Assembly: GCA_002269645.1 (NCBI GenBank)
Contig: NIVC01002274.1
Location: forward strand, 62,001-126,000
Direction: 5' to 3'
DNA: 64,000 nucleotides
Source: Macrostomum lignano
Lineage: Eukaryota
A model generated the notes under the pieces. That model was not told the DNA's origin. It was given only the letters and a program-made list of their open reading frames with translations, and ran no database searches. Shown here piece after piece: positions 2,131 through 52,143 of the stretch (position 1 is the first letter of the stretch; each line of letters opens with the position of its first letter). The position numbers were made by a program, and so were the translations under genes.

Positions 2131-2289
2131 GCAAGCATCCACGAGACTATAAGTAGCTAGTGCGACAATTTCCTTAGCATTATAGCGGCTCCTTTAAAAT
2201 TCGCTTACTTTTACGTTTGAAATTGTGTATCTTTTATGTTTAACAGGGTGGCTCTTTTTTGTTCTACGCTCGTACATGGAAACTCTTTT

Positions 2290-4945
2290 ATGTTTGATAC
2301 GGTGGCTTTTCAATGTCTGACATGGTGGCTCTTCTATGTTTGACATGGTGGCTCTTTAATGTTCTTAATGGTGTCTGTTTTATGTTTGACATGGTGGCTC
2401 TTTAATGTTCTTAATGGTGTCTGTATTATGTTTGACATGGTGGCTCTTTAATGTTTTACATGGAGTCACGTATATGTTTGACATGGTGGCTCTTTAATGT
2501 TTTACATGGTAGCACTTTCATGTTTGACCTGGTGGCTCTTTAATGTTTGACATGGTGGCTCTTTAATATTTGACATGGTGGCTCTTTTATGTTTGACATG
2601 GTGGCTCTTTTATCTTTGACATGGTGGCTCTTTAATGTTCGACATGGAGTCATGTTTTGACATGGTAGCTCTTGAATGTTCAACATGGAGTCATGTATAT
2701 GTTTGACATGGTGGCTCTTTAATGTTTGACATGGTGGCTCTTTATGTTTGACATGGTGGCTCTTTAATGTTTTACATGGTGGCACTTTCATGTTTGACCT
2801 GGTGGCTCTTTAATGTTCGACATGGAGTCATGTATATGTTTGACATGGTAGCTCTTGAATGTTCAACATGGAGTCATGTATATGTTCGACATGGTGGCTC
2901 TTAAATGTTTGACATGGTGTCTCTTTAATGTTTGACATGGAGTCATGTATATGTTTGACATGGTGGCTCTTGAATGTTCGACATAGAGTCATGTATATGT
3001 TTGCCATGGTGGCTCTTTAATGTTAGACATGGTGGCTCTTTTATGTTTTGCATGGTGGCTCTTTAATGTCTAACATGGAGTCACGTATATGTTTGACATG
3101 GAGTCATGTATATGTTTGACATGGTGGCTCTTGTATTTTTAACATGTTGGCTCTTTAATGTTCGACATGGTGGCTCTTTAATGTCTAACATGGAGTCACG
3201 TATATGTTTGACATGGAGTCATGTATATGTCTGATATGGTAGCTCTTTAATGTTTTACATGGAGTCACGTATATGTTTCACATGGTGGCTATTTTATGTT
3301 TGACATGGTGGTTCTTTAATGTTTGACATGGTGGCTCTTTAATGTTTGATATGGTGGCTCTTTAATGTTCTTAATGGTGTCTGTTTTATGTTTGACATGG
3401 TGGCTCTTTAATGTTCGACATGGTGGTTCTTTAATGTTTGACATGGTGGCTCTTTAATGTTTGATATGGTGGCTCTTTAATGTTCTTAATGGTGTCTGTT
3501 TTATGTTTGACATGGTGGCTCTTTAATGTTCGACATGGTGGCTCTTTAATGTTCTTAATGGTGGCTCTTTAATGTTCGACATGGTGGTTCTTTTAGGCTT
3601 GAAATGGTGGCTCTTTAATGTTTGACATTGTGGCTCTTTAATGTTTGAAATGGTGGCTCTTTAATGTTTGACATGGTGGCTTTTGAATGTTCGACATGGT
3701 GGCTCTTTAATGTTCTTAATGGTGTCTGTTTTATGTTTGAATTGGTGGCTCTTTAATGTTCGATATGGTGGCTCTTTAATGTTTGACATGGGGGCTCTTT
3801 AATGTTTGACATGGAGTCATGTATATGTTTGCCATGGTGGCTCTTTAATGTTAGACATGGTGGCTCTTTTATGTTTTGCATGGTGGCTCTTTAATGTTTA
3901 ACATGGAGTCACGTATATGTTTGACATGGAGTCATGTATATGTTTGACATGGTGGCTCTTGTATTTTTAACATGTTGGCTCTTTAATGTTCGACATGGTG
4001 GCTCTTTAATGTCTAACATGGAGTCACGTATATGTTTGACATGGAGTCATGTATATGTCTGATATGGTAGCTCTTTAATGTTTTACATGGAGTCACGTAT
4101 ATGTTTCACATGGTGGCTATTTTATGTTTGACATGGTGGCTCTTTAATGTTCGACATAGTGGCTCTTTAATGTTCTTAATGGTGGCTCTTTAATGTTCGA
4201 CATGGTGGTTCTTTTAGGTTTGAAATGGTGGCTCTTTAATGTTTGACATTGTGGCTCTTTAATGTTTGACATGGTGGCTTTTTAATGTTCGACATGGTGG
4301 CTCTTTTAGGTTTTGAAATGGTGGCTCTTTAATGTTTGACTTGGTAGCTCTTTAATGTTCGACATGGTGGCTCTTTAATGTTCTTAATGGTGTCTGTTTT
4401 ATGTTTGACATGGTGGCTCTTTAATGTTTTACATGGAGTCATGTATATGTTTTACATGGTGGCTCTTTTATGTTCGACATGGTGGCTCTTTAATGTTCTT
4501 AATGGTGTCTGTTTTATGTTTGACATGGTGGCTCTTTAATGTTCGACATGGTGGCTCTTTAATGTTTGACATGGTGACTCTTTTATGTTTGATATGGTGG
4601 CTCTTTAATGTTCGACATGGTGGCTGTTTTATGTTTGACATGGTAGCTCTTTAATGTTCGACATGGTGGCTCTTTAATGTTCTTAATGGTGTCTGTTTTA
4701 TGTTTGACATGGTGGCTCTTTAATGTTTGACATGGTGACTATTTTATGTTTGATATGGTGGCTTTTGAATGTTCGACATGGTGGTTCTGTAATGTTTTTA
4801 ATGGTGGCTGGTTTATGTTTGACATGGTGGCTCTTTAATGTTTCGACATGGTGACTCTTTAATGTTCTTAATGGTAACTCTTTTATGTTCGAAATGGTGG
4901 CTCTTTTATGTTTGACATGGTGGCTCTTGTATGTTTGACATTGCG
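2290..4945. repeat. 23-bp satellite array (ATGTTTGACATGGTGGCTCTTTA and variants), roughly 115 units
   Basis: Period 23 read directly. Variant units (ATGTTCTTAATGGTGTCTGTTTT, ATGTTTGACATGGAGTCATGTAT) recur in blocks. Confidence 0.95.
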
Positions 4946-5839: not shown

Positions 5840-6330
5840 TTAGCCCCACTTCCCCCAGATTAGCACTACGCCCAGATTAGCACTCAGCCCAGATTAGCAC
5901 TCAGCCCATATTAGCACTCAGCCCAGATTAGCACTCAGCCTAGATTAGCACTCAGCCCAGATTAGCACTCAGCCTAGATTAGCACTCAGCCCAGATTAGC
6001 ACTCAGCCCAGATTAGCACTCAGCCTAGATTAGCACTCAGCCCAGATTAGCACTCAGCCCAGATTAGCACTCAGCCTAGATTAGCACTCAGCCCAGATTA
6101 GCACTCAGCCCAGATTAGCACTCAGCCTAGATTAGCACTCAGCCCAGATTAGCACTCAGCCCAGATTAGCACTCAGCCTAGATTAGCACTCAGTCCAGAT
6201 AAGCACTCAGCCTAGATAAGCACTCAGCCTAGATTAGCACTCAGCCCAGATTAGCACTCAGCCCAGATTAGCACTCAGCCTAGATTAGCACTCAGCCTAG
6301 ATTAGCACCGCTCCACAGATTACCGCCGCT
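5840..6330. repeat. 17-bp minisatellite (AGATTAGCACTCAGCCC) with a mostly 3-unit CCC/CCC/CCT higher-order period
   Basis: Read directly; degenerate copies on both flanks. Confidence 0.95.
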
Positions 6331-7588
6331 TCCCAGATAGTTTCACCTTCCCAGATTAGCACTACTTCTCCAGATTCGCACCACTCCGCAAAAATTCGCA
6401 CCGCTACTTCCTCCAGATTAGCCCCAATCTCCCAGATTAGCCCCCACTCCTTTATATTAGCCCCGCTCCCTTAGATTAGCACCACTCCCAAACTGCTAAA
6501 AGGTGACTACTATTATCGCCTCAGAAGTTTAAAGTTAAACCCTCCCCAGAAATTGGCAGTTATCCCCACAACAACCTGAAATTATCCCTTCTAATTCCGC
6601 AAAACAGACTGCAGTCATACAACTCATTTGCACTCTACAAATTTTATTATTATTATTCATTTATCCCTCAGGGACCCAGAATTGTCCCTTCTGCAAGCCA
6701 CAATTATTCACAGTTAGATATCCTCCTCAGAAGTCTGCCATTATTATCCTAGCAGTCTGCAGCTATCCCCTCGGCAGTTTGCAGCTTATACGCTCATAAG
6801 TCTCGAGAAACTAACCAACGTCAGCAGTTTGCAGTTTGTCCCCACTACGTATCGCGCCAATTCTGCAGGGTTTTTAGGCAGATTTGACGCAAAAAACGCA
6901 AATTATACTACTATCTGAAAATGAAGTAAGTAGTATACAAAAACGCTATCCTAAGCGTGATATGGCAATATGTAGTCGTAATAACCATGTGCTCATATTA
7001 ATTCCATGTACATTAATCCCTATCTATCTCAAATTGGATATGTACATTAATCCATATCCCAAATTGTCTATCCCCCAATTCTACATGTACACTCACATTA
7101 ATCTACAGTGTCATCCCCAGCGCGCGCGCACCAAAAATACACGTACAATACTACATGTACACAGAGGTGAGAATTACTAATCTCATCTACTACCAAATGA
7201 GTCAACTAACCGTGTAGCGCACATCATGTATAAGTATTTACAATGAAGATATATTTACATTTAATCAGTAGCATATTACAGGAATCGAGACATGTACACC
7301 ATCACCAGCAAATAGAATATACAGAAAATTTTACATTGTTTTTCAATAATTTTCTCTTCATAAATGATTTTAAACAGGTTTGACATGCAAAATATGTACA
7401 ATAGATTTTTACATTGGCAATTTCGCCACACACAATACAAAAATGCTCTATGTACATGAATTATATATACAGCAAATAGATTCTGATAAATACAGCAGTA
7501 TTACAATGCAAATTATGTACAATAAATAGATTTTACTAATTTAATATTGCAAAATGTACATTGAATTGTCAGTCACAACTAGAATACA

Positions 7589-8329
7589 TTATTTATAGCC
7601 ATAAGGCCGGCTGCAGGCCCCGTACACGCGCTTCGTCAGGACGCGCTGAAACGTCTTGTCCATGGTGATCGTGTGTATGGTACAAGACGCCTTGTCGCGC
7701 CTGAACTGAAGCTGCGGCAGCTGCAGGGAGCCGCCGTGTAGTAGGGCGCTGCGCAGGTCGTCGCTGCGCTCCCGAATCTCCGGAGTCAGCCGGATGCCCT
7801 TGCATTTCAGGACCTGACTCCGGACACCGGCCGCATCCTCGACAATGTAAGTGTAGAGCTTGGGCCCTCCACTTACAAAGTCGGTCATCCGGCTGCCTGC
7901 GGGCACCTCGTCGGTCCACATTCCGAGGCTCGTGCCATGGGGCGGCTCCCATTGGCCCTCGGAATGCCGGTAAACGACCCTGGGTGTGGGGGGAGAGAGA
8001 TAATTACTTCCACATGCCAACTATTCAATTCTAAAAGAATTTTTCCAATGCAATACTTACGAGTCAGTGTCGCAGTAAATGGCCCGTTCGCCGAGCCCCT
8101 CCAAGGCCTCGTACAGGCGCAGCCGGGCCTGCGTGGTTGTAAAGACTCCGATTGGCACATTGGAGTACCTGAATGGCCGCTGATTAAAGTAACGGTGCCG
8201 GTACTCTAGCAGCATAAACTCGCTGCCAATCGGCTCGCAGGCCTTGACTTTGAGGTTGGGGTCGGTCAGCCGGGCGAGCCAGTCCTCGTAGCTGGATACA
8301 ATTTCGGTCGATGTCAGGTCGTCACGCAT
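7589..8329 (-). CDS. Protein-primed family B DNA polymerase (Polinton/adintovirus type), C-terminal 219 aa; exons 8329-8061 and 7979-7589
   Basis: Motifs GVFTTTQARLRLYEAL, YCDTDS|VVY, LGMWTDE, DFVSGGPKLY, KCKG. Mirror image of the right-arm copy. Confidence 0.85.
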
Positions 8330-8954
8330 ATCCTCACCCCTCGAAGCCCCTATACTGAATGTTGAATCACCCTTTAACTCGGACCATAGTCAAATTCAAC
8401 CCTGTTCGAAAACAGCCACCCCTCCGATGTTTACCAGACACAGCGCAGACCCCATAACAAATTGAGCTAAATTTTAACACTCGCCCCTGTTTTCTCTGTC
8501 CCCCCTTCTAAATGCCAAGGAATTTCGACCCTCTCTCCATTTTCAGTGTACAGACAGATCTTTCCACAGCACAGACCATATATTAAACTTCAAAACCCCT
8601 CTCTTCTCCGATTACGTCATCCATGCCGCCCCAGTTAGCAAGAAACCAACTTTTAATGCACACATCAACCCCGCGAGCAAATCCGAGTCCGCCAACCTCT
8701 ACCTGCATTGACAAACCCCAGCTGCATTTGTAAATGTACACAGCCTATGAATCAGTGTCTCCACCGCATGCAATTCTGATTTACTTGATTCTAAACTTTG
8801 TAAGTTGTATAAGTCACCCTTGCGTTATACTAGAAGTAGTGAAGTCCACATATTTAAATACGTGAGGCTATTCAATTCTGCCTCTCCGCCTCCCCTACCT
8901 TCTCACTTCAAGCTTTCAGACTTGGTCTTTGAGACGGTCGGTTTAATCTGTTAG

Positions 8955-9960
8955 AAGCAGGAATGAATCATGCACTGACCTCTCCATACAAAGTAAAGTT
9001 GGAATTTCAGACAAGAAATTTGGTTATTTTAAAAGCTAAATGACTAGAAATGCACATTTTTTTCATTAAAATGCAGCTTTCTACAGTTTTTTTACGATTT
9101 TAACCTTAAAATGCAGACTTTGTTGATCAAAATCAGTAGTTTCATCACTAGAAACCATACTTTCAACAACTAATTTGTCCAAATATCGCTTTCAACTTGA
9201 CCTTAGACAGCGTTTAAGCAGGAATGAACCCCCCACGAACATACACAAGCTAGCCCAAAATCAGCCAAAGACATGGCTATTGAAGCCTAAATTGCTAGAA
9301 ATGAGCATTTTTTCCTAAGAAATACAATTTTTCACAGTTTTTACGCATTTTTTACGTTAAAATGCAGCCTTTATTGATCAAAATCAGTAGTTTCATCACT
9401 AAAAACCGCAATTTTAACACAAAATTATCACAAATGCTACTTCTGGAACTCTGAGACAGCTTTGAGCAGGAATTATAATCGCACACGGATTACCCGAGCC
9501 AGTCCAATATTCCACTGAAGCCAGGGTTTTTTTTAAAGCTGAATTGTTAGAATTGCTCATTCTTTCGTTTAATAAATGACAATTTTCACAGTTTTATTAT
9601 TTTCTAACGTTAAAATGCGAAATGTATTGGTCAAACTTAGTAGTTTCATCCCAAAAGCCATAATTTCAACCGCTAATTTGTCCAAATGCTGATTTCAAAG
9701 TTGGCAAGAGACAGCTTTCGAGCAGGAATGAGTCACACACTGATCTCCATATGCACACCCCGGCCCAAGTTGGAATTCCACCCAAGACATTTTCATTGAA
9801 AGCTAAATTACTAGAAATTGCACATTTTCGTTTTAAAAAGGTCAATTTTCACAGTTTTTACTCTTTTTAACGTTAAAATGCTGACTTTATTGAACAAAAT
9901 TAATCACTTCATCAGCAGAAACCATAATTTTTACAACTTAATGCTGTTTCATCATTCAAA
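8955..9960. repeat. Four diverged ~255-bp direct repeats inside the inverted arm (mirrored at ~11055-12060)
   Basis: GCAGGAAT at ~8958, 9218, 9467 and 9723, each followed by AAAGCT.AAT..CTAGAA, TTTT.ACAGTTTT and AGTAGTTTCATC-type motifs. Confidence 0.8.
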
Positions 9961-12686
9961 TGTATGTATTTGGTACGTGTAATACCCCTCAAGAAGTCAG
10001 GGAAGGGATTATTCTTGAATATAGGGTTAAAACGTAAAGTTTGCTATAAACCTAGCTATAATAATTTTAACATATACAGTCTGCGAAGCGGCCCGTTGAT
10101 TTCGATTGACATTTAAACTGTCCCTCCCAGACCTCTCTCTCTCCTTCTGCACCCACCGAGAAAAGTGACTCATGCGGCAATCAGCTGGACAGGTTTTATT
10201 ACTGAATTGGCAAAACAGCCAACACCCAATGGTCATATTAGACTCGTCTTCACAGCACAGACCCATGTAGAACAGAACCACTCGTCCCTGTCTCTCTGAC
10301 CTTACCATTTCTAACTGTCAAGGAATTCCGACCCTCCCTCTCCAATTTCAGTGTACAAACAGATATTTTCACAGCACAGACTCATATATTGAGCCTCCTC
10401 CAACCAAAACCCTATCTTGATTACGTCATCCACCTCCCCCATAGAAGCAGTTAGCAAGAAACAAAATTTTTCGATGCACATATGAACACTGTGAACCATG
10501 CAAAATAGCACATCTACGGGTCGATTTTGATTGACAATTTAATACCTTTTGTTGATGCTGCTGTGTACAGTAGTCTTATTTCCGAAGCTCCTAGCAGTCA
10601 TCTTTTAGATGTGGTGAATCAGTGTTGTTTTTGCCAACTTTACATCTTGATTCATCCTCCAAATTCTTCAACTCTGACCATATTCAATAATTTAACCCAT
10701 GCAAGTAGATTTGCCAATTCGCCAAATTAGCCAATACGAATGGGGCCAGAGGACCCACCCAAATCGAGCCCTTGTCTCTCTCAGGCCTCTCTCTCCTACA
10801 CATACCCCAGAAAAGTGACTCATGAGGCAATCAGTTTAACAGGTTCAGTATACTGAATTGGCAAAACAGCAAACACCCAATGGTCAATGGACTCGTCTTC
10901 GCAGCACAGACCATTTTGAATAAAGCCAAAACACACATATACCCCTATTCTCTGACCTGTGTTACGCATGTGTTACGCATGTCCTGTGTGCTGTATTCAA
11001 GAATAATCCCTTCCCTGACTTCTTGAGGGGTATTACACGTACCAAATACATACATTTGAATGATGAAACAGCATTAAGTTGTAAAAATTATGGTTTCTGC
11101 TGATGAAGTGATTAATTTTGTTCAATAAAGTCAGCATTTTAACGTTAAAAAGAGTAAAAACTGTGAAAATTGACCTTTTTAAAACGAAAATGTGCAATTT
11201 CTAGTAATTTAGCTTTCAATGAAAATGTCTTGGGTGGAATTCCAACTTGGGCCGGGGTGTGCATATGGAGATCAGTGTGTGACTCATTCCTGCTCGAAAG
11301 CTGTCTCTTGCCAACTTTGAAATCAGCATTTGGACAAATTAGCGGTTGAAATTATGGCTTTTGGGATGAAACTACTAAGTTTGACCAATACATTTCGCAT
11401 TTTAACGTTAGAAAATAATAAAACTGTGAAAATTGTCATTTATTAAACGAAAGAATGAGCAATTCTAACAATTCAGCTTTAAAAAAAACCCTGGCTTCAG
11501 TGGAATATTGGACTGGCTCGGGTAATCCGTGTGCGATTATAATTCCTGCTCAAAGCTGTCTCAGAGTTCCAGAAGTAGCATTTGTGATAATTTTGTGTTA
11601 AAATTGCGGTTTTTAGTGATGAAACTACTGATTTTGATCAATAAAGGCTGCATTTTAACGTAAAAAATGCGTAAAAACTGTGAAAAATTGTATTTCTTAG
11701 GAAAAAATGCTCATTTCTAGCAATTTAGGCTTCAATAGCCATGTCTTTGGCTGATTTTGGGCTAGCTTGTGTATGTTCGTGGGGGGTTCATTCCTGCTTA
11801 AACGCTGTCTAAGGTCAAGTTGAAAGCGATATTTGGACAAATTAGTTGTTGAAAGTATGGTTTCTAGTGATGAAACTACTGATTTTGATCAACAAAGTCT
11901 GCATTTTAAGGTTAAAATCGTAAAAAAACTGTAGAAAGCTGCATTTTAATGAAAAAAATGTGCATTTCTAGTCATTTAGCTTTTAAAATAACCAAATTTC
12001 TTGTCTGAAATTCCAACTTTACTTTGTATGGAGAGGTCAGTGCATGATTCATTCCTGCTTCTAACAGATTAAACCGACCGTCTCAAAGACCAAGTCTGAA
12101 AGCTTGAAGTGAGAAGGTAGGGGAGGCGGAGAGGCAGAATTGAATAGCCTCACGTATTTAAATATGTGGACTTCACTACTTCTAGTATAACGCAAGGGTG
12201 ACTTATACAATTTACAAAGTTTAGAATCAAGTAAATCAGAATTGCATGCGGTGGAGACACTGATTCATAGGCTGTGTACATTTACAAATGCAGCTGGGGT
12301 TTGTCAATGCAGGTAGAGGTTGGCGGACTCGGATTTGCTCGCGGGGGTTGATGTGTGCATTAAAAGTTGGTTTCTTGCTAACTGGGGCGGCATGGATGAC
12401 GTAATCGGAGAAGAGAGGGGTTTTGAAGTTTAATATATGGTCTGTGCTGTGGAAAGATCTGTCTGTACACTGAAAATGGAGAGAGGGTCGAAATTCCTTG
12501 GCATTTAGAAGGGGGGACAGAGAAAACAGGGGCGAGTGTTAAAATTTAGCTCAATTTGTTATGGGGTCTGCGCTGTGTCTGGTAAACATCGGAGGGGTGG
12601 CTGTTTTCGAACAGGGTTGAATTTGACTATGGTCCGAGTTAAAGGGTGATTCAACATTCAGTATAGGGGCTTCGAGGGGTGAGGAT

Positions 12687-13427
12687 ATGCGTGACGACCT
12701 GACATCGACCGAAATTGTATCCAGCTACGAGGACTGGCTCGCCCGGCTGACCGACCCCAACCTCAAAGTCAAGGCCTGCGAGCCGATTGGCAGCGAGTTT
12801 ATGCTGCTAGAGTACCGGCACCGTTACTTTAATCAGCGGCCATTCAGGTACTCCAATGTGCCAATCGGAGTCTTTACAACCACGCAGGCCCGGCTGCGCC
12901 TGTACGAGGCCTTGGAGGGGCTCGGCGAACGGGCCATTTACTGCGACACTGACTCGTAAGTATTGCATTGGAAAAATTCTTTTAGAATTGAATAGTTGGC
13001 ATGTGGAAGTAATTATCTCTCTCCCCCCACACCCAGGGTCGTTTACCGGCATTCCGAGGGCCAATGGGAGCCGCCCCATGGCACGAGCCTCGGAATGTGG
13101 ACCGACGAGGTGCCCGCAGGCAGCCGGATGACCGACTTTGTAAGTGGAGGGCCCAAGCTCTACACTTACATTGTCGAGGATGCGGCCGGTGTCCGGAGTC
13201 AGGTCCTGAAATGCAAGGGCATCCGGCTGACTCCGGAGATTCGGGAGCGCAGCGACGACCTGCGCAGCGCCCTACTACACGGCGGCTCCCTGCAGCTGCC
13301 GCAGCTTCAGTTCAGGCGCGACAAGGCGTCTTGTACCATACACACGATCACCATGGACAAGACGTTTCAGCGCGTCCTGACGAAACGTGTGTACGGGGCC
13401 TGCAGCAGGCCTTATGGCTATAAATAA
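12687..13427 (+). CDS. Protein-primed family B DNA polymerase C-terminal 219 aa; exons 12687-12955 and 13037-13427, 81-nt intron
   Basis: Donor TC|GTAAGT and acceptor CTCTCTCCCCCCACACCCAG|G rejoin the frame as YCDTDS-VVYRH. 269+391=660 nt, open to TAA. Lacks the exonuclease and motifs A/B. Confidence 0.85.
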
Positions 13428-15529
13428 TGTAATCCAATTATAACTGACAATTCAATGTACATTTTGCAATATTAAAATCTATTTATTATACATAATTTGC
13501 ATTGTAATACTGCTGTATTTATCAGAATCTATTTGCTGTATATAATTCAATGTACATAGAGCATTTTTGTATTGTGTGTGGCGAAATTGCCAATGTAAAA
13601 ATCTATTGTACATATTTTGCATGTCAAACCTGTTTAAAATCATTTATGAAGAGAAAATTATTGAAAAACAATGTAAAATTTTCTGTATATTCTATTTGCT
13701 GGTGATGGTGTACATGTCTCGATTCCTGTAATATGCTACTGATTAAATGTAAATATATCTTCATTGTAAATACTTATACATGATGTGCGCTACACGGTTA
13801 GTTGACTCATTTGGTAGTAGATGAGATTAGTAATTCTCCCCTCTGTGTACATGTAGTATTGTACATGTAATTTTGGTGCGCGCGCGCTGGGGATGACACT
13901 GTAGATTAATGTAAGTGTACATATAGAATTGGGGATAGACATGGACATTTGAGATAGGGATTAATGTACATGGAATTAATGTACATATCCATTTTGAGAT
14001 AGATAGGGATTATTGAACATGGAATTAATGTACAATTTGAGATAGATAGGGATTAATGTACATGGAATTAATATGAGCACATGGTTATTACGACTACATA
14101 TTGCCATATCATCTGATTAAATGTAAATATATCTTCATTGTAAATACTTATACATGATGTACGCTACACGGTTAGTTGACTCATTTGGTAGTAGATGAGA
14201 TTAGTAATTCTCACCTCTGTGTACATGTAGTATTGTACGTGTATTTTTGGTGCGCGCGCGCTGGGGATGACACTGTAGATTAATGTGAGTGTACATGTAG
14301 AATTGGGGGATAGACAATTTGGGATATGGATTAATGTACATATCCAATTTGAGATAGATGGGGATTAATGTACATGGAATTAATGTACATATATGAACAC
14401 ATGGATTATTACAACTACATATTGCCATATCACGCTTAGGATAGCGTTTTTGTATACTACTTACTTCATTTTCAGATAGTAGTATAATTTGCGTTTTTTG
14501 CGTCAAATCTGCCTAAAAACCCTGCAGAATTGGCGCGATACGTAGTGTCCCCTTTTCAGTCTGCAATGATCCCTTCAACAGTCTGCAGTTCCCCTCAGTA
14601 GTCTGCAGTCAATTCATTTGCAGTCAGCAAGTGTTTCCTTAATAATTCTCATTTATCCCCTCAGCAGTCTGCAGTTCTCTCAGCTGGCCCCTCAGTATTC
14701 TCAGCAAACTGCAATGATCTTTTCAATGATTTAAAATTTTGCTCAGCATTTACGACGGCGCACTAATCAATTTTCGATACATATTGGCAGTCTTGCGCAA
14801 CTCAGCATTTAGCAATACCTCAGCAGTTTAGCAGCATCGTCTACTGCAGTGATCCTTTCAACAATGTAGAAATTAGCTCAGCATTTTATGGCTCACTAAT
14901 CGATTTTCGATACATATCGGCAATCTTTTGCACCATTCATCATTTAGCAATACCTCAGCAGTTTAGCAGCATCATCTGCAGTTTAGTAATTTAATCCCCT
15001 GCAGTTTAGTAAAATCTACTTCTATATACCTAGATAATAACAATTAATGGGATCTTAGGATTTTACAAATCAAATCAAATTTGCTTAGTGGCTTGTGCGA
15101 GTAGCAAAAGTAAATTATTGTAATTAATAAAAAAATTTCAATTAGAATTAATCAAAAAATGTTCAAAATAGTCGAGGCAGAAGCTACTAATGAAAGAATT
15201 TATTTAATTTTAATTATCCGCTGGGGAGGCGGACTCGAACCTTGGACCTTATGCCTAGCCTAAACCTAGTCCTAGTGCCTACACTGCGGCTATTCCGCCT
15301 ACTAATCGGAGGGTGCAAAAATCAGCCATATATGCTTCGGCACTGCAGTCAAATACACAGCAGTGATAGGCTACTCAGTGTGCACAGGTTGTATGCAGGC
15401 AGAGCCAATGCACAGTTGAGTGAAATCTATAAATAGCAATTGTCTATGCAGTCAGCCAGGGTCAGAATGTACACACGCAGCCACTGAGCATTATTTTACT
15501 CTCCCTTATTGCAGCCAGTATTGAGGCGT

Positions 15530-18530: not shown

Positions 18531-19335
18531 AAATTAAATAAAGCTATAATGCTATGCTGGGGTGAAAAACTGAGACGTAAAGGCTCTCAGAGAATAACTG
18601 AGATTATGGGGGGTTTCTGAGATGTCAAAGCAAAAGTCAGAAGCTACTTCAAACTTCACGTACTTTACTCAATTTTTTATTGCATTCTTTGTTGGCTTGC
18701 CACAAGGGGTGCTGATAGAAGAAGAGTCATGTAAAAAAAAAGTAGCACTATGTATACATAAAAGAAAAGTCATGTCGAAGTTAAAAGATTCATTTGGGAA
18801 TTGCTACGATGTCAAAGCTTGGTGGAAATCGTTATAGTGCTATGATTTTTAAAGAAGGAATCAATAAAATGTCAAGGCTTAGGGGAGAAGAATTGCTGAG
18901 ATTTCAAGGCTTTAGGTTGGGTTAAAGTTAGGTTTAGGTCAGGTGTGGGTTGAGGGTTGTATTCTATCAGGTTTCAAGGTTAACAGGGGATTTTTTAGAT
19001 TTCAAGGTTTATGGGGGGCATCGCTGACCTGTCAAGGCTTACGGGGGGAATAGCTGAGATGTCAAGGCTCACGGGGGTATAAATGAGATTTCAAGGCTGA
19101 AGTCAAAAGCTATATGTAGTTTATTGAAAACTTTTTATTACATTATTTGATGACTCCTCAGGGAAGGGATCGCTGATAAAAAAGCATAATGTAAAAAAAT
19201 AAAAGAAGCTTCATGTTGAAGTTAAGAGATTCATTTGGGAATCCCTACGATGTCAAGGCTTGCAGGGAATCAATATAAATACTGCAGTAGTGCTATAATG
19301 ACTCTTAGAGAGAATTACTGAAATGTCAATGCTTT

Positions 19336-19400
19336 AGGGTTAGGCTAGGGTTAGGGTTAGGGTTAGGGTTAAGCTAGGGTTAGGCTAGGGTTAGGGTTAG
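19336..19400 (+). repeat. Short interstitial (TTAGGG)n-like tract
   Basis: About 10 TTAGGG/CTAGGG/TTAGGC hexamers inside a degenerate GAGATGTCAAGGCTT repeat region. Confidence 0.75.
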
Positions 19401-20552: not shown

Positions 20553-23500
20553 ATGTCAAAAGCAAATATGAAGCAATCGGTTTGGGAGCGGATCAAGGAT
20601 CAAAAGTGCCCGTCAGAGCAGGACACTAAGCTAGAGCGCGAGCGCCAGCGAAAGGAGGAGCGCGAGCGTCAGCACCAGCTGCAGCTGCAGGGGCAGCGCG
20701 ATGCCGAACGCTCGGCGAAGCAGGCGGAGGCCGTCGAGTCGATTGTCGAGCTGGTGCGCGTGGCCGCCGAGCGCCTGTCGATGCCGCTGCGTCCAGCCCA
20801 CTTGGCCCAATCCTTCGAGATCTTCTACAAGCAGCCGTTTCCGCTGGACCTGTTCGACCGCAGCTCGGCCGAGGAGGTGGCCGTCAACCTGGCGCTGTCC
20901 GGTCGGCTCGTCTTGGACTCGAAGCGGTGCCTGCGGGTCGCCAGCAACGCCATGGTCGAGTCGGCAAAGTGCAGCGCATCGGCGTCAAAGCGGCAGCTGA
21001 GTCTGCCTGCTGAGGTGAAAAAGCGGCTGCTGTGCATCGCCTACGTTTATCCCGGCCTGCCAGTTCTCCTGCTGCCCGAGAAGTACCGGGAGGAGTGAGT
21101 GCGACTAGCCTTGCCTAGTGGCATAAACTTTGCCTTGATATTTTTCTGAATTATTTTCCTCTTTTAATATTCTTTGCGCATATTTAGTATTGACGCCGCT
21201 TTCATTCGGCATTAATCTCACGCTTTCCACTCTGATTTGTAACTATCTGCGGACGCCACAGTGAAACTGCTGCTGCCTTTATCCCGCAGTTTCAACTGCC
21301 AGCTGCCCAGCTTCTCCAGCATGGGCTGCAACAATCTGTTGGATCTGCTGCGCCAAATCCCGGGCATAGTGCTGATGAAAAATCCCATTGACCCGGATCT
21401 CCGCATCGCCGTGTACGGCACGCGGCTGCCCAACCTGCCGAAGGCGCCGCCGTTTCCCGAGAACTGCGTGCCTCCCGGCTACCGGCTGCCCGTCGAGCGC
21501 ATGCGGCGGCCGCGGCAGCCCGCTGTTGGCACCGAAGTGAGCGCGCACTACCTGCTGCAGCAGCAGTACAACGTGCTGGTGCCGCTGGCCTCAAACTCGG
21601 GCCCGGGCCGCTTCTTCGTGATTCCACACGGCGAGGTGTCGAACCGCCTTGACAAGCTGATGGAGCAGCTGGACTCGGCTGAGCACCCGCCAATGCCGGA
21701 GGTGTACACCAGGCCTGATCAGCTGTGCGTGGCCATCACCAAGCAGGGCTGTCGGCGGGTGAGAATCGTCAGTCATGCTGCCGACGGCTCCGCTGACCGA
21801 CGGCTGGTGGAGGATGTCGACTACGGAGAGCTGCTGACTGTTGGCGTGTCCGACCTGCGCTGCATGCACCGGAGGTTCGCGGAGGGAGTCCCCGCCCACG
21901 CAATTCTGTGCCGACTGGCCTTTCTGATTCCGAATGGCGGAGCCGCCCAGTTTGATGAGGCCGCCGTGAAAGAGTTCCACCGAATCACTCAGGACGTGCT
22001 GCTCAAGCTGACTGTGGATCTTGAGCCCCCAGCTGATCAGGTTGGTTCCTTTGCTGTCATATTTAATCTGCAAGTTATTACATTGATTGATGGGTCTGCA
22101 ACTTTGCTCTTCAGCCGCACGCGCCCTACTCTGTGTATCTGGATGGAGAGATGGGCTCTTTCTTGGAATTTTTCAGCAGACAGTCGCTCGGACTGCTGCC
22201 GATTCAGGTGAGTGATTTATTACTGTTGTACAGGTGATTGCTGGTAGTTAAAAGCGCTTGACAATGTATAATACCGCTTCGTGCTGAAACTTCAGATTGA
22301 CTTCAAGCAGAAGGCTTTCGCACCGCTGGGCAAGGTGGACAGGCTCTGCAAGCCAGACGGCAAGAACGGTAAATAATGAGTTTTGTATTGGGCCTGTAGG
22401 CCTCAGTGGGGATTTATATTGAAACTCTGCCTACTTTTGCAAAGTCGGACAATGTTTGTCATTCCCCGGTCCCGTAGCCGCTCAATGCGAGCCCGAGGCC
22501 AGCGTGCGCACCGGCGGCCACTCCGACATCGAAGAGGTCGGCACCGATGCGGAAGCGGGCAGCAGCCGCGCCATGACGCCCGGCAGCGAAGCTGGCGATG
22601 ACCTCGACGAGAACCTGCAGGAATATAATCATAACCAAGATTATGAGCAGCAGCACTATGAACGTCAAGATTATGAGCAGCAGAACTATGAGCGTCAAGA
22701 TTATGAGCAGCAGAACTATGAGCGTCAAGATTATGAGCAGCAGGACTATGAGCGTCAAGATTATGAGCAGCAGAACTATGAGCGTCAAGATTATGAGCAG
22801 CAGGAGGACTATGAGCGTCAATATTATGAGCAGCAGGGCTATGAGCATCAGGCTGATAATGAGTGGCAGGATTATGAGCCGCAGGCCGATGATGAGCAGC
22901 ATCAGGATTATGAGCAGCAGCAGGATTTTGAGCGGCAGTGTTGTGAGCAGCCGTGTTCCGAACCAATAAGATTCCCGTCTGAAGTCGGCGATAAACTAAC
23001 CTTCAACATGAATGAAGCCCCAGGCGAAAAAAGATCATTTGCGGTCGCAAACCGGTGTAGTGATCTGACTAGACGGGTTAAAGCCACGGATTTACAGAGT
23101 AAGTATTGTGCCTGTAAAGTGGAATAATTTAAGCTTTACACTTTCTAGGATGCATAATTGCATTGCATCTTTGTCTTGTTGTTTGTGTTGTGTTTGTTTT
23201 TAATTGGAATTCGTGAGTTCCAAGTTCCCAAACGGGAAGGGGAGTTTTTGTTCCTAATACGTAGTTAAGCTTTAAGCAGTATGGTACTGCTCACGTTCGG
23301 ATTGCTTATGACTAAATCTAATTGACTATGCTTTGGACTTCAACCAGTCTCATGAAATATATGTTATTACTAGTGGAAATGAATACGAACAGGGCAACTT
23401 AGTTTAGGTTAGGACAGGAGATGTCAGATGGGCACAATGCCGAAAGTACAGGTAGTTTATGATAAAAATCTGATTATCAATCGAAATGAGAGTCGCAAAG

Positions 23501-25494: not shown

Positions 25495-25974
25495 GATCGC
25501 ACGTCCTAGGCGAGATCTGTTTACTTTCTAATAACTAATCAGTGCAACTTTGTGCCGCGCCTACACCGGTTAATAATAGTACTTTGTCTTCTTTAAACAG
25601 ATATTATGCATTTGCTATTTTAGTGTAAGCCTATGCGCTCTTAGTACTATCGGCTAGTCTGGCATTTTCATATCCCTGTAAAAAGAAACCTTCAGTCCAT
25701 TTGAGCTTTTACCGATGGATCTCTAGAATAACAGTTTTGTAAAATCTGGCTTCCTCAGGGCGCAAAAGCATTACAGTATCGGTGTGTTAATACATCTTCA
25801 AGTTCAATTTCGAACCTAATAGTAATTGTGCTTGTATCATTAAACATTACTGTTGACTTGCTGGTCATCTTTTTATAATATATTCAATTCCTGATGCTGC
25901 AGTTTTAGCAGCCGTGCACTTTGTCTTTATGTTTTATACATTTTGTGGTTATGTTTACAGTTTCCTGCTAAGAG

Positions 25975-27260
25975 TCCTGTGTATGTATGCTGTATCTCCG
26001 GCCTCTGGGTATGTATGCTGTGTCTCCGGCCTCTGGGTATGTATGCTGTGTCTCCGGTCTCTGTGTATGTATGCTGTATCTCCGGCCTCTGCGTATGTAT
26101 GCTGTGTCTCCGGCCTCTGGGCATGTATGCTGTGTCTCCGGTCTCTGTGTATGTATGCTGTGTCTCCGGTCTCTGTGTATGTATGCTGTGTCTCCGGTCT
26201 CTGTGTATGTATGCTGTGTCTCCGGTCTCTGTGTATGTATGCTGTGTCTCCGGTCTCTGTGTATGTATGCTGTGTCTCCGGTCTCTGTGTATGTATGCTG
26301 TGTCTCCGGTCTCTGTGTATGTATGCTGTGTCTCCGGTCTCTGTGTATGTATGCTGTGTCTCCGGTCTCTGGGCATGTATGCTGTGTCTCCGGTCTCTGG
26401 GCATGTATGCTGTGTCTCCGGTCTCTGGGCATGTATGCTGTGTCTCCGGTCTCTGTGTATGTATGCTGTGTCTCCGGTCTCTGTGTATGTATGCTGTGTC
26501 TCCGGTCTCTGTGTATGTATGCTGTGTCTCCGGTCTCTGTGTATGTATGCTGTGTCTCCGGTCTCTGTGTATGTATGCTGTGTCTCCGGTCTCTGGGCAT
26601 GTATGCTGTGTCTCCGGTCTCTGTGTATGTATGCTGTATCTCCGGCCTCTGGGTATGTATGCTGTGTCTCCGGCCTCTGGGTATGTATGCTGTGTCTCCG
26701 GTCTCTGTGTATGTATGCTGTGTCTCCGGTCTCTGTGTATGTATGCTGTGTCTCCGGTCTCTGTGTATGTATGCTGTGTCTCCGGTCTCTGTGTATGTAT
26801 GCTGTGTCTCCGGTCTCTGTGTATGTATGCTGTGTCTCCGGTCTCTGTGTATGTATGCTGTGTCTCCGGTCTCTGTGTATGTATGCTGTGTCTCCGGTCT
26901 CTGTGTATGTATGCTGTGTCTCCGGTCTCTGTGTATGTATGCTGTGTCTCCGGTCTCTGGGCATGTATGCTGTGTCTCCGGTCTCTGTGTATGTATGCTG
27001 TGTCTCCGGTCTCTGGTATGTATGCTGTGTCTCCGGTCTCTGTGTATGTATGCTGTGTCTCCGGTCTCTGTGTATGTATGCTGTGTCTCCGGTCTCTGTG
27101 TATGTATGCTGTGTCTCCGGTCTCTGTGTATGTATGCTGTGTCTCCGGTCTCTGTGTATGTATGCTGTGTCTCCGGTCTCTGTGTATGTATGCTGTGTCT
27201 CCGGTCTCTGTGTATGTATGCTGTGTCTCCGGCCTCTGTTTATGTATACTGCTGTGTCCC
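25975..27260. repeat. 28-bp tandem minisatellite (GTATGTATGCTGTGTCTCCGGTCTCTGT), ~45 units
   Basis: Stop-free in several frames, giving the spurious 450-aa ORFs with a 28-aa period. Confidence 0.97.
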
Positions 27261-27435: not shown

Positions 27436-29844
27436 ATGCTGTCCCTGCCGAATCCCAGCTCCAGCGCGGGCCAGTCGGCTCGATCTCAGCTGTGGCGGAC
27501 TCAGCCATTGTCTGAGCAGCAGAGGAACAAGAAAAAGCAGCAGCAAGGTCTGTCCGGCTTCAATCGCGTCCAAGCCGTCTCGGCCGACTTTGTCGCCGAT
27601 GTCGGGGATCTGCCGCCTCTGCTTAACGACATCCTGTTGCGCGCCGTTTTCGGCGAACCCGCAACTGGCCTGCGCGTCCCCTTGTGGCTGTTGCGCCAGG
27701 CCGGGCCGCACCTGCCCGAATACCGGCAGCTGCTGGCGCACCACGGTCACGCCGAGCTGTGCCGAAATCCTGAGCTGGCCAGCGAGCTGACTGTTCTACC
27801 CTTGACTCGTTGCGAACTTGACGCGGCGCCAATCTTTACAGACATCATACTGGTACCAATAGCTTTGGGATTAGTTGCTAAGCAAAGCGTCGGCGGTGTC
27901 AATCAACGCGCCGGTCTGATTGTGTCGGAGCCGCTGACCGGCCCGGCAGACAGAGCGGCATTGGCGCTGGAATTCGGGGCCGCTCGTGGCCGGCTGCACT
28001 GCGTACTGGAGGCGCTTAATCTGGCCAGGCGTAGGTTAATGGGCCGCGCCGTCCTGCTGGGCCTGGCTGGAGCGCCATGGACGCTGCTGGCTCGCATGGC
28101 TGGCGACCCCGGGCTGGCCGTCGGGTGGCTCTACAGTCAGCCAGAAGCGTGCGAGAGGCTCTTAGACAAGCTGACTGGCCTGCTGGTTGACTTTCTAGTT
28201 GATCAGGTGGCTGCCGGAGCTCAGGTAAAGCGGCTGGAAGCTAAATGGATAATGGTGAATTACATATAAAATGAATGGGTTACTGTGGATTCTCACCGAT
28301 TGTGGAGGACTGGGTAACTCAGGCTATTCATCATACATGCGCAACTTTGGAAATCACTCGGCCGTTTCTATTGGCAACACACACATGTAAGTCACCATTG
28401 ACTGAGAGTCACGTGACTACTATTCCGTCCAATAGCGACTTACATGAGTGTGTTGCCAATAGAAACGGCCGGGTGAATCCCTAGGTTGCGCCCAAGCATG
28501 CTATTCATATTTTACACTGGATGAATTCAATGAATGGTGCAGTCGTGCAGATGGGACTTAGCAGATAGGACTGAGTACATGTAGATGGGATTAGGCAGAT
28601 AGGACTGAGTAGATGGGATTAGGGCAGATGGAACTGAGCAGATGAAACTGAGCAGATGGGATTAGGCAGGTGGAACTGAGCAGATGGGATTAGGGCAGAT
28701 GGAACTGAGCAGATGGGATTAGGCAGATGGAACTGAGCAGATGGGATTAGGCAGATGGAACTGAGCAGATGGAACTGAGCAGATGGGATTAGGCAGATGG
28801 AACTGAGCAGATGGAAATGAGCAGATGGGATTAGGCAGGTGGAACTGAGCAGATGGGATTAGGGCAGATGGAACTGAGCAGATGGGATTAGGCAGATGGA
28901 ACTGAGCAGATGGAACTGAGCAGATGGGATTAGGCAGATGGAACTGAGCAGATGGAACTGAGCAGATGGGATTAGGCAGATGGAACTGAGCAGATGGAAC
29001 TGAGCAGATGGGATTAGGCAGATGGAACTGAGCAGATGGAACTGAGCAGGTGGGATTAGGCAGGTGGAACTGAGCAGATGGGATTAGGCAGATGGGACTG
29101 AGTAGATGGGATTGGGCAGATGGAACTGAGCAGATGGGATTAGGCAGATGGGACTGAGTAGATGGGATTAGGCAGATGGAACTGAGCAGATGGGATTAGG
29201 CAGATGGGACTGAGCAGATGGGATTAGGCAGATGGGACTGAGCTAATGTGATTAGGTAGATGGGACTGAGCAGATGGGATTAGGCAGATGGAACTGAGCA
29301 GATGGGATTAGGCAGATGGAACTGGGCGGACGCGCAATCGTGCTTCATGCCAATGTCGCGCTATCCCATGCCGCAGGCTCTGCAGGTGGTTGAGCCGTTG
29401 GCGGGCCGCCTGTCGCCAAACCTGTTCTGCCAGTTCGCGTTGCCCAGACTGCGCCGGCTGGCGTCGGAGGTTCGCGCCCGGATTGGACCAGGCGTGCCGC
29501 TGATTTTGTTTGCTCCCTCCTGCCACAGCGTTCTGGAGGAGCTCGCGTGTAGCGGCTTCGACGTGCTGGGCGTTGACCACACGATGCGGCCGGAGCACTG
29601 CCGTCGGGTGGCCGCCGCGGCAGGGGTTGCCGTCCAGGGCAACCTCGACCCGGCCCTGCTGGCCTATGCGCCCAGCGAGGTGCTGCGCGATCACGTCAGA
29701 CGGATGCTGCGCGCTTTCGGCGCCAAGCGCTACGTGTGCAACGTTGGCGCCGGCCTGCTGCCGGAGACTCCGCCTGAGCGGCTGGCCGAGCTGACACGGC
29801 TGGTGCGCCTTCTGGTTGAGGATTTGAGCTCGAAGAACGAGTAG
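27436..29844 (+). CDS. UROD: Uroporphyrinogen decarboxylase-like protein, divergent, 418 aa; exons 27436-28224 and 29377-29844
   Basis: NDILLRAVFGE, PLWLLRQAG, DAAPIFTDI, LAGAPWTL, QVAAGAQ|ALQVVE, GFDVLGVD, AVQGNLDP, YVCNVGAG follow the UROD/HemE motif order. Phase-0 intron CAG|GTAAAG ... CCGCAG|GCT. Confidence 0.9.
28349..28480. repeat. ~132-bp foldback (~50-bp arms, central AGTCACGTGACT palindrome) in the UROD intron
   Basis: CGGCCGTTTCTATTGGCAACACACACATGTAAGTC pairs with GACTTACATGAGTGTGTTGCCAATAGAAACGGCCG. Confidence 0.75.
28545..29325. repeat. 14-bp two-variant minisatellite (GCAGATGGGATTAG / GCAGATGGAACTGA) in the UROD intron
   Basis: Read directly. Confidence 0.95.
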
Positions 29845-51498: not shown

Positions 51499-52143
51499 CT
51501 GTACAGTGAAAATAAAAAACAGACTATTAATAGCAGTGATTGGCCGAAATCAATGGTATTAATTATTATTGAGGAAATTATACTAATTCTATTTTTCTGC
51601 ATTAAGGTTCTGAAAATTCTATACTTTATCAGAGATTTCCGGTTCCTATATATCACAGGGAGCACTATAAAGTTCCAACTACACTTAAACAGGAACTGAA
51701 CTTCACTTTCTACCTCACATGGCAATTTAGGCAAGTATTATTAACAATCTAGTGCCCCCTTTGGGGTGGCCAATTCACAAGGGACAAAAAATATGTAGAT
51801 GATTTATGTATCTAGATGAGGGATGCCATAATATACACAAGAAGGGCACCAGCCACCATAATATACATCAGCCTAGTGTTCCACTGTAGCTATGGCTACA
51901 GGATCTTATGGCAAATACATGTATGGTAAAACAGGTGCCTACAGCAACTACGCTTGTATGGATACGTCTATGGTAAATAGCTGCTCTCACAGCTATGACT
52001 ATGGGAATATGGTAGTTGTTGTCACATTCGGTAGATTCCTGTAGACATAGTTACGAGTATTAATTAAAAAAATATTAGAAACAGGTACAGTAAAACAAAG
52101 ATACTTTGGTAAACTGTATTATAGACTTAGAAACTTACTAGAG

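What the first reader, a model, noticed from the sequence alone, without database searches (positions are those of the whole stretch)
6843..14547. Giant palindromic CAC...GTG transposon whose 3.2-kb inverted arms carry a viral-type DNA polymerase
Seen: exact CACTAC/GTAGTG termini, a 4-bp TCCC duplication, insertion into a split repeat, and ~3.2-kb inverted arms around a ~970-bp spacer, each arm with an outward-pointing pPolB gene. Known: CAC...GTG ends with a 4-bp TSD are typical of Chapaev (CMC/CACTA superfamily) cut-and-paste transposons. Polintons carry pPolB but have AG...CT-type ends, ~6-bp TSDs and a retroviral-like integrase. Inference: this is either a non-autonomous snap-back derivative of a self-synthesising element that pairs pPolB with a CMC transposase, or a CMC element that captured a Polinton gene and copied one end onto the other. 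I am not aware of a described CMC-pPolB combination.
Basis: partly seen in the sequence, partly recalled or inferred. Interest (0 to 1): 0.9.

Follow-up and report, generated by a model that had tools for sequence, protein, structure and literature searches.

The report
Fold-back transposon carrying dead polymerase fragments
A 7.7-kb palindromic mobile element in a flatworm genome (most likely Macrostomum lignano) has the end sequences and 4-bp insertion footprint of a CACTA/Chapaev-type cut-and-paste transposon, and carries in each arm only the dead last fifth of a Maverick/Polinton virus-like DNA polymerase gene, so it is a curiosity and not a new kind of self-replicating element.

Summary
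The structure is real. It is a 7,705-bp insertion (6843-14547) with exact CACTAC...GTAGTG ends and a direct TCCC duplication. It splits a local minisatellite. Its inverted arms are 3,182 and 3,557 nt (about 99.5% identical) around an asymmetric 966-nt spacer.

The "pPolB gene" in each arm is a fragment. It holds about 220 of about 1,160 codons, from just after motif B to the natural stop, and is interrupted by one GT-AG intron. All upstream coding sequence is missing from the window. No transposase, integrase, capsid or ATPase is encoded.

The closest proteins are Macrostomum lignano polymerase models (92-100% identical; one 183-aa model is identical). More distant relatives sit in ordinary Polintons with an rve integrase, an A32-like ATPase or a capsid gene. 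One of these has AG...CT ends.

Best reading (about 0.55): a non-autonomous CMC (Chapaev/CACTA-like) fold-back transposon that holds the remnant of a Maverick end, with one end copied in inverted orientation onto the other.

Not excluded, because no other M. lignano copies could be reached: a defective Maverick with unusual ends, or a Teratorn-like CMC-Maverick composite.

Interest is modest: a new member of a known kind.

The parts
6740..6838 (.). Left part of the interrupted host minisatellite (units of about 20 nt containing CAGTYTGCAG)
   Evidence: three of the five exact motif copies in the window lie here
6839..6842 (.). Left copy of the 4-bp target-site duplication, TCCC
6843..14547 (.). 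Whole element, 7,705 bp, with CACTAC...GTAGTG ends
6843..6870 (+). Left terminal 28-mer, exactly complementary to the right one
6843..10024 (.). Left inverted arm, 3,182 nt
6997..7560 (.). Left subterminal domain, AT-rich. ATGTACA occurs 9 times, and ATTAATGTACAT (one mismatch allowed) 10 times in the element against 0.38 expected for the whole window. It runs from about 155 nt inside the end up to the pPolB stop.
7589..8326 (-). Left copy of the 5'-truncated pPolB fragment, pointing outward. It retains motif C (YCDTDS), KLY and the natural C-terminus and stop, with one GT-AG intron-like interruption.
8478..8669 (.). Non-coding module, about 75% similar to spacer 10279-10487 (mirror copy at 12347-12538)
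8956..10024 (.). Left array of about four diverged tandem units of 251-263 nt (66-76% identity), reaching the inner end of the arm
   Evidence: (D2, D5, D17)
10025..10990 (.). Unique, asymmetric spacer, 966 nt. It contains an internal direct repeat (10119-10263 and 10773-10912, 82%) and no recognisable coding domain.
10991..14547 (.). Right inverted arm, 3,557 nt
10991..12059 (.). Right array of tandem units of about 251-263 nt (mirror of the left array)
   Evidence: D3, D4, D18
12690..13427 (+). Right copy of the 5'-truncated pPolB fragment, pointing outward. It differs from the left copy at 3 positions, all synonymous. GC is 57.7% against 32-34% on either side.
13449..14390 (.). Right subterminal ATGTACA-repeat domain
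13739..14486 (.). Tandem duplication present only in the right arm (two copies of about 374 nt). It accounts for the difference in arm length.
   Evidence: (D6)
14520..14547 (-). Right terminal 28-mer
14548..14551 (.). Right copy of the 4-bp target-site duplication, TCCC
14552..14680 (.). Right part of the interrupted host minisatellite

Best explanation
This is a non-autonomous cut-and-paste DNA transposon of the CMC (CACTA-Mirage-Chapaev) kind, Chapaev-like by its 4-bp footprint. It sits in a Macrostomum lignano-type flatworm genome.

It encodes no enzyme of its own. A CMC DDE transposase made elsewhere in the genome would recognise the CACTAC ends and subterminal repeats, cut the element out and insert it with a 4-bp staggered cut. 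That cut would have produced the TCCC duplication in a host minisatellite (inferred).

Its backbone is AT-rich and non-coding. It consists of subterminal repeats, a 250-nt tandem array and a unique core. Embedded in it is a GC-rich remnant of a Maverick/Polinton end: the last fifth of the pPolB gene, possibly with some downstream sequence. The remnant was probably left by a nested Maverick insertion followed by deletion, or acquired by template switching during repair (inferred).

Later, about 3.2 kb of one end was copied in inverted orientation in place of the other end. Both ends are now the same end, and the element is a fold-back (inferred).

The polymerase fragment cannot work as a polymerase. 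Any function it has would be as the double-stranded stem of a hairpin transcript.
For: Shown:
- Exact CACTAC...GTAGTG ends with a direct, non-palindromic 4-bp TSD. The host repeat is reconstituted across the empty site.
- These match the published Chapaev hallmarks of a 3-4 bp TSD and invariable CAC/GTG ends (PMC4079192). Repbase classifies non-autonomous DNA transposons by exactly these features (PMC4455052).
- A subterminal short-repeat domain is present.
- No Pfam domain appears in any other ORF of the arms or spacer, and there is no RNA family match.
- Polymerase homology is confined to 12690-13427 and its mirror. M. lignano models match at 100% from that point on, and their upstream 120-930 residues match nothing in the window. 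The long M. lignano model P0181 shows that the fragment starts at residue 934 and that the Pfam domain lies almost wholly upstream.
- The fragment is a sharp GC island, 57.7% against 32-34% on both sides.
- Relatives of the polymerase sit in ordinary Polintons: rve in Mytilus; rve plus chromodomain and an A32-like ATPase in an ENA contig; a capsid gene in L008; AG...CT ends in L003.
- 4 bp and 7.7 kb lie outside the published Polinton ranges (PMC10748475).
Against: - Only one copy could be examined. No CMC transposase was shown in this genome, and no second copy confirms the TSD length.
- The geometry, with an outward-pointing pPolB stop 746 nt (left) or 1,120 nt (right) from the end, is the same as at a genuine Polinton end. 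In Mytilus L003 the distance is about 1.0 kb. The ends could therefore belong to the same parent as the polymerase.
- Mu killer, the best-known inverted duplication of a transposon end plus a partial terminal gene, derives wholly from one parent element (PMC3440606).
- Where the Maverick-derived piece stops between the polymerase stop and the end cannot be told from one copy.
Confidence: 0.55

Rival explanations
1. Defective palindromic (snap-back-type) derivative of a Macrostomum Maverick. The Maverick's own ends are CAC...GTG, and its rve integrase makes a 4-bp duplication. On this reading the arms are a true Maverick end with an internal deletion, duplicated in inverted orientation during protein-primed replication or repair.
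For: - The arm geometry matches a real Polinton end. In the Mytilus relative L003, pPolB is the terminal gene, points outward, and stops about 1.0 kb from the end.
- The short-repeat domain begins right after the stop codon.
- The mismatch cluster around the stop suggests exchange with paralogous polymerase copies that share at least about 15 nt downstream of the stop.
- Mu killer is a precedent for an end plus a partial gene from a single parent (PMC3440606).
Against: - A 4-bp TSD is outside the 5-8 bp reported for Polintons.
- The CAC...GTG ends differ from the AG...CT of the related Mytilus element and of Polintons generally (own knowledge).
- Inward of the fragment, the arm does not continue into the polymerase gene as a simple snap-back would. 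It continues into 1.7 kb of non-coding modules and tandem repeats.
- The 966-nt spacer is non-coding and asymmetric.
Confidence: 0.12
2. Deletion derivative of a composite family in which CMC-type transposon ends enclose and move a whole Maverick, as piggyBac ends do for the herpesvirus in Teratorn; or a Maverick lineage that replaced its integrase with a CMC transposase.
For: - A CMC-type end lies directly outside what looks like a Maverick end.
- There is a precedent for a transposon-virus fusion (PMC5601938).
- Nothing in the window contradicts it.
Against: - There is no positive evidence. The element holds no transposase and no further Maverick gene.
- The polymerase is broken in mid-gene and joined to non-coding repeats.
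- Relatives of the polymerase use rve integrases.
- Nested insertion or capture is a far commoner way to get such a mosaic (own knowledge of CACTA, MULE and Helitron captures).
Confidence: 0.08
3. A cut-and-paste element of another or undescribed superfamily that also makes 4-bp duplications (for example Sola, Ginger or Academ-like), with CAC ends by coincidence.
For: Classification rests on only 3-5 terminal bases and one TSD. Several superfamilies are listed with short TSDs (own knowledge).
Against: The ends are not just CAC but the full CACTA pentamer. The literature found describes the combination of invariable CAC/GTG ends and a 3-4 bp TSD only for Chapaev/CMC.
Confidence: 0.1
4. Not a mobile element as it stands: either an assembly or read fold-back artefact, or a local inverted duplication whose boundaries imitate ends plus a TSD.
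For: - Long perfect palindromes are a known artefact of missed hairpin adapters in long-read libraries (own knowledge).
- The inner 2.2 kb of the arms is almost identical, and most indels lie in AT-rich stretches that are hard to polish.
Against: - A fold-back artefact would carry the inverted repeat on into the flanks and would have no large unique centre. Here the repeat stops exactly at CAC/GTG.
- The flanks are direct continuations of one host minisatellite with a direct TCCC on each side, and the centre is a 966-nt asymmetric spacer.
- An annotated M. lignano protein model (A0A1I8JDY2) starts at the Met created by the truncation junction and is 100% identical. The truncated copy therefore exists in the annotated assembly.
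Confidence: 0.05

Closest known systems
Non-autonomous Chapaev / CACTA (CMC superfamily) DNA transposons
   Same: 5'-CAC(TA)...(TA)GTG-3' ends, a 3-4 bp target-site duplication, subterminal short repeats, no coding capacity of its own, and a non-coding interior that can hold foreign fragments.
   Different: The inverted arms are very long (3.2-3.6 kb, against tens of bp for typical terminal repeats). Both ends are the same end. The cargo is a piece of a virus-like element. No autonomous partner or second copy was seen.
Polinton / Maverick virus-like self-synthesising transposons
   Same: The polymerase fragment belongs to their protein-primed family B polymerases. It points outward and stops about 0.75-1.1 kb from the end, as in a related Mytilus Polinton.
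   Different: Only about 19% of the polymerase remains, and there is no integrase, capsid, ATPase or protease. The element is 7.7 kb, not 13-25 kb. Its TSD is 4 bp, not 5-8 bp, and its ends are CAC...GTG, not AG...CT.
Mu killer of maize (inverted duplication of a MuDR end plus a partial mudrA gene)
   Same: Two copies of one transposon end plus a partial terminal gene, arranged as a long inverted repeat that could give a hairpin transcript several kb long.
   Different: Mu killer derives from one parent element, and its silencing role is shown genetically. Here the end and the gene fragment probably come from different elements, and no transcript or small RNA has been examined.
Fold-back and long-inverted-repeat transposons (Drosophila FB, Galileo)
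   Same: Kilobase-scale inverted arms that contain internal tandem repeats around a central region.
   Different: Those belong to other superfamilies (MULE-like and P) with 7-9 bp duplications (own knowledge). Here the ends and footprint are CMC-like.
Teratorn (piggyBac-herpesvirus fusion in medaka)
   Same: Cut-and-paste transposon ends lie next to sequence derived from a DNA virus-like element.
   Different: Teratorn holds a complete virus genome and an active transposase inside its ends. This element holds one dead gene fragment.

Membership tests
CMC (CACTA-Mirage-Chapaev) transposons, non-autonomous member | Ends 5'-CAC...GTG-3' (CACTA...TAGTG) | tested here: met
   CACTACG.../...CGTAGTG, with an exact 28-nt inverted repeat at the ends. 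Hallmark as stated in PMC4079192.
CMC (CACTA-Mirage-Chapaev) transposons, non-autonomous member | Target-site duplication of 2-4 bp (Chapaev 3-4 bp) | tested here: met
   Direct TCCC on both sides. A single TCCC restores the host repeat. This rests on one copy only.
CMC (CACTA-Mirage-Chapaev) transposons, non-autonomous member | Subterminal short repeats near the ends | tested here: met
   The ATTAATGTACAT / ATGTACA motifs are enriched in the roughly 560-940 nt next to each end. Such repeats are not exclusive to CMC.
CMC (CACTA-Mirage-Chapaev) transposons, non-autonomous member | An autonomous partner with the same ends that encodes a DDE transposase with the CMC signature | not testable with these tools
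   The element has no transposase ORF. The host genome beyond the window could not be reached.
CMC (CACTA-Mirage-Chapaev) transposons, non-autonomous member | Repeated family: further copies with the same ends and the same TSD length | not testable with these tools
   This is the only copy in the window. The ends are absent from the viral and metagenome collections.
Polinton / Maverick | Complete protein-primed family B DNA polymerase | tested here: not met
   Only residues from about 934 onward of a parent of roughly 1,160 aa are present. There is one 5' truncation, and the upstream residues are absent from the window.
Polinton / Maverick | Retroviral-like (rve) integrase | tested here: not met
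   No rve or other domain in any ORF of the element.
Polinton / Maverick | Virion module (major and minor capsid proteins, packaging ATPase, protease) | tested here: not met
   No such domain. Relatives do have them.
Polinton / Maverick | 5-8 bp (usually 6 bp) TSD, 13-25 kb length, 100-1,500 bp terminal repeats | tested here: not met
   4-bp TSD, 7.7 kb, arms of 3.2-3.6 kb. Ranges from PMC10748475.
Polinton / Maverick | AG...CT ends | tested here: not met
   The ends here are CAC...GTG. The related Mytilus element L003 ends AGTAGTC...GACTACT.
Transposon-virus fusion (Teratorn-like) | A transposase gene and a complete viral gene set inside one pair of transposon ends | tested here: not met
   Not met in this copy. 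Whether longer family members exist could not be tested.
Fold-back assembly or read artefact | The inverted repeat continues into the flanks, with no unique centre and no direct duplication at its limits | tested here: not met
   The repeat stops at the ends. The flanks are direct continuations of one host repeat with a direct TCCC, and there is a 966-nt asymmetric centre.

The most novel reading that the evidence does not exclude
The element is a stripped-down member of a family in which CMC-type (CACTAC) ends enclose and move a complete Maverick/Polinton. That would mean either a Teratorn-like fusion or a Maverick lineage that swapped its retroviral-type integrase for a CMC transposase. A lesser form of novelty is that the 3-kb inverted polymerase-bearing arms act as a Mu killer-like hairpin source of small RNAs against Mavericks in a flatworm.
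Probability: 0.07. Interest if true: 0.8.

Novelty: new member of a known kind. Interest (0 to 1): 0.3.

Why it matters
As read here, it documents three things. First, virus-like Maverick/Polinton polymerases are present and young in Macrostomum lignano (several models are 92-100% identical to the window copy); I found no paper in the held library describing this. Second, a CACTA/Chapaev-like element inserted with a clean, undecayed 4-bp footprint. Third, a cut-and-paste transposon can carry a piece of a virus-like element as a long inverted repeat.

That arrangement is the raw material for hairpin RNA against the virus-like element, as Mu killer is for MuDR. This makes a host-defence role testable by simple read mapping.

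If the minority reading were right, it would be the first Polinton moved by a DDE transposase, a second independent transposon-virus fusion after Teratorn.

Tried and rejected
- **Reaching other host-genome copies.** Exact-protein look-ups for an M. lignano polymerase model and for the window ORF were not on record. The terminal 23-mer and 20-mer gave no match in viral or metagenome contigs. The subterminal 98-aa ORF found no homologue. The full-length M. lignano polymerase model found only distant relatives.
- **Looking for Maverick-type integrases in M. lignano.** I searched with the Mytilus integrase. The 120 rows listed were filled mainly by bivalve and unnamed metagenome sequences, none of them named as M. 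lignano, so nothing was learned about the flatworm.
- **Pfam on the two coding blocks of the fragment.** There was no hit. Against PDB there was only a weak match of motif C to phi29 polymerase (E = 0.12). The identification therefore rests on homologues that carry PF03175.
- **Terminal repeats in loci L001 and L002.** None were found.
- **Similarity between this element's terminal 250 nt and the Mytilus Polinton terminal repeats.** It was weak, and the best scores (in the wrong orientation) were at the upper limit of the shuffle controls. Rejected.
- **A second CAC...GTG pair at 49420-58549 with a 3-bp duplication.** The right end lies inside a tandem repeat. Rejected as chance.
- **A weak motif-B-like stretch upstream of the fragment in the arm.** E is about 0.05 and it carries one in-frame stop. 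It is too weak to move the boundary of the fragment.
- **A short reverse-strand match to an upstream polymerase segment.** Judged chance.
- **Rfam.** No match.
- **More relatives' contexts (L004-L007).** The gene calls were too fragmented to be informative.


Full report
**Observation**

The repeat finder returns five collinear inverted blocks. Together they pair 6843-10024 with 10991-14547 at 99-100% complementarity around a 966-nt centre.

The sequence at the limits reads ...GTTTG TCCC | CACTACGTATCGCGCC... on the left and ...GGCGCGATACGTAGTG | TCCC CTTTTCAG... on the right. The 28-nt terminal sequence is exact at both ends and occurs nowhere else in the window, with none expected by chance. 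No other part of the element recurs in the window.

I scanned for CAC...GTG pairs flanked by identical 4-mers. The outer pair has TCCC. Seven pairs lie inside the palindrome, and their "duplications" are the palindromic tetramers CGCG, TTAA, TGCA and CATG, which any palindrome gives trivially. Twenty shuffled windows gave 0 or 1 hit.

The flanks belong to one host minisatellite. All five exact CAGTYTGCAG motifs of the 64-kb window lie within 90 nt to the left or 130 nt to the right of the element. A single TCCC restores the period. The insertion, its ends and its 4-bp footprint are therefore real.

An assembly fold-back would carry the inverted repeat into the flanks and would lack a large asymmetric centre. 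It does not fit.

**Anatomy**

- The arms are 3,182 and 3,557 nt. The excess is a tandem duplication of about 374 nt present only in the right arm.
- The arms differ by 14 mismatches and 7 indel events. Eight of the mismatches sit in 58 nt around the polymerase stop codon, and the three inside the reading frame are all synonymous. This looks like exchange with, or polishing against, a paralogous polymerase copy.
- From each end inward the order is:
  1. about 155 nt of terminal sequence;
  2. an AT-rich domain studded with ATGTACA / ATTAATGTACAT motifs;
  3. a 738-nt GC-rich block, 57.7% GC against 32-34% on both sides;
  4. about 630 nt of non-coding sequence, including a module that recurs at 75% identity in the spacer;
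  5. about four diverged tandem units of 251-263 nt that reach the inner end of the arm.
- The spacer is asymmetric, has its own 82% direct repeat and has no coding signal.
- No ORF outside the GC-rich block matches any Pfam family. There is no Rfam match.

**The polymerase**

The GC-rich block translates in one frame into two coding blocks separated by about 80 nt with GT...AG boundaries. The first block ends in ...AIYCDTDS. The second begins VVYRH..., contains GGPKLYTY and ends ...SRPYGYK followed by a stop.

Against a Culicoides polymerase, the first block ends at residue 315 and the second starts at residue 316. The interruption is therefore an intron, not damage.

A database search gave eleven Macrostomum lignano proteins as best hits, most of them carrying PF03175. 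After them came insect, mussel and metagenomic polymerases at 25-40% identity. The only PDB match is motif C of phi29 polymerase, and it is weak.

tblastn of all hits against the window shows homology only at 12690-13424 and its mirror. M. lignano models match at 100% from the residues RDDL... onward. Their upstream 120-930 residues, including motifs A and B and the exonuclease domain, match nothing in the window.

In the longest M. lignano model (P0181, 1,078 aa) the fragment starts at residue 934. The Pfam domain (residues 570-947) lies almost wholly upstream.

Each arm therefore holds one 5'-truncated copy, about 19% of the gene. The retained blocks have no frameshift or premature stop. A short motif-B-like stretch further upstream is too weak to count (E about 0.05, one in-frame stop).

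One UniProt model, A0A1I8JDY2 (183 aa), begins with the Met created at the truncation junction and is identical to the window copy. This fixes the host as M. lignano or something extremely close (taxonomy). It also shows that the truncated copy exists in the annotated assembly.

**What the polymerase normally belongs to**

- In Mytilus galloprovincialis the related polymerase lies beside an rve integrase.
- In an ENA contig it lies with an A32-like ATPase and an rve-chromodomain integrase.
- In a GenBank metagenome contig it lies with a double-jelly-roll capsid gene.
- In Mytilus edulis locus L003 I could delimit a 9.9-kb element with terminal repeats of about 205 bp and ends AGTAGTC...GACTACT. 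It holds an ATPase and an integrase. Its polymerase points outward, and its C-terminal ORF (30% identical to the window's second block, E = 2e-12) stops about 1.0 kb from the end.

These are ordinary Polintons/Mavericks.

**Interpretation**

The published hallmarks of Chapaev elements are a 3-4 bp duplication and invariable CAC/GTG ends (PMC4079192). Non-autonomous DNA transposons are classified by exactly such features (PMC4455052). Polintons are given as 13-25 kb with 100-1,500 bp terminal repeats and 5-8 bp duplications (PMC10748475).

The element meets the first set of criteria and fails the second. It also fails every Polinton gene criterion.

I therefore read it as a non-autonomous CMC-type transposon, moved in trans, that contains the remnant of a Maverick end. 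At some point about 3.2 kb of one end replaced the other end in inverted orientation. Inverted duplications made by aberrant transposition or repair are known for cut-and-paste elements (maize Ac/Ds, bioRxiv 10.1101/2020.01.07.897926, abstract seen).

The steps "moved by a CMC transposase", "nested insertion or capture" and "end replacement" are inferences. The structure, the truncation and the footprint are shown.

**What keeps the rivals alive**

The distance and orientation of the polymerase stop relative to the end (746 and 1,120 nt, outward) are just those of a true Polinton end (about 1.0 kb in L003). The short-repeat domain begins right after the stop. The terminal region could therefore come from the same parent as the polymerase, as in Mu killer (PMC3440606).

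That would mean either a Maverick with unusual ends and footprint, or a Teratorn-like composite (PMC5601938).

Against a simple snap-back, the arm does not continue from the fragment into the rest of the polymerase gene. It continues into non-coding repeats.

I could not reach any other copy in the host genome, so these rivals are down-weighted, not refuted.

**Novelty and verdict**

Fold-back derivatives, cargo-carrying CACTA-type elements and dead Polinton fragments are all known. The particular combination, and Mavericks in Macrostomum, appear undescribed in the library I could search.

It is a new member of a known kind and of modest interest (0.3). There is a small chance (about 0.07) of something much more interesting. 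The decisive evidence is a plain census of copies, ends, duplications and contents in the M. lignano assemblies, together with long-read and small-RNA mapping.

Noticed in passing
window 19334-19400: Interstitial telomere-like (TTAGGG)n tract of about 12 units, next to other short tandem arrays.
   Followed up: no
window 2283-4941; 5854-6308; 1917-2140; 25974-27259: Large satellite and minisatellite arrays: 23-bp unit x116, 17-bp x27, 18-bp x13, and an array of about 28-nt period that creates long spurious ORFs in several frames. The element sits in a very repeat-rich region.
   Followed up: partly
window 21281-22934 and 41688-43342; 20647-21102 and 33418-33873: Segmental duplications (96.6% and 98.9% identical). 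The first pair each carries a Tudor-domain ORF.
   Followed up: partly
window 27436-28269: ORF with a strong uroporphyrinogen decarboxylase (URO-D) match, presumably a host gene exon.
   Followed up: no
window 36080-37513 (-), 55815-57179 (+), 52964-54775 (+): Other mobile-element ORFs: a reverse transcriptase; an LTR-retrotransposon RNase H plus integrase zinc-finger block; and a zinc-finger/DUF4371 ORF, possibly hAT-related (own guess).
   Followed up: no
window 7574-7631 and mirror 13385-13442: Eight of the 14 arm-to-arm mismatches cluster in 58 nt around the polymerase stop codon. The three inside the frame are all synonymous. This suggests a short conversion tract from a paralogous polymerase copy, or mis-polishing with one.
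   Followed up: partly
window 12687-13427 (and mirror 7589-8329): UniProt A0A1I8JDY2 (M. lignano, 183 aa, carrying an unrelated automatic name) is 100% identical to the truncated polymerase copy here. It starts at the Met created at the truncation junction. An annotated 'gene' therefore sits on this element or an identical copy.
   Followed up: yes
locus L003 2733-12598 (Mytilus edulis CAJPWZ010002753.1): A compact 9.9-kb Polinton with terminal repeats of about 205 bp, ends AGTAGTC...GACTACT, flanks matching at 4 of 6 bases, an outward-pointing split polymerase, an A32-like ATPase and an rve integrase.
   Followed up: partly
window 49420-58549: A CAC...GTG pair with a 3-bp GTA repeat and 12 of 14 matching terminal bases. 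The right end lies inside a tandem repeat, so it was judged chance.
   Followed up: yes
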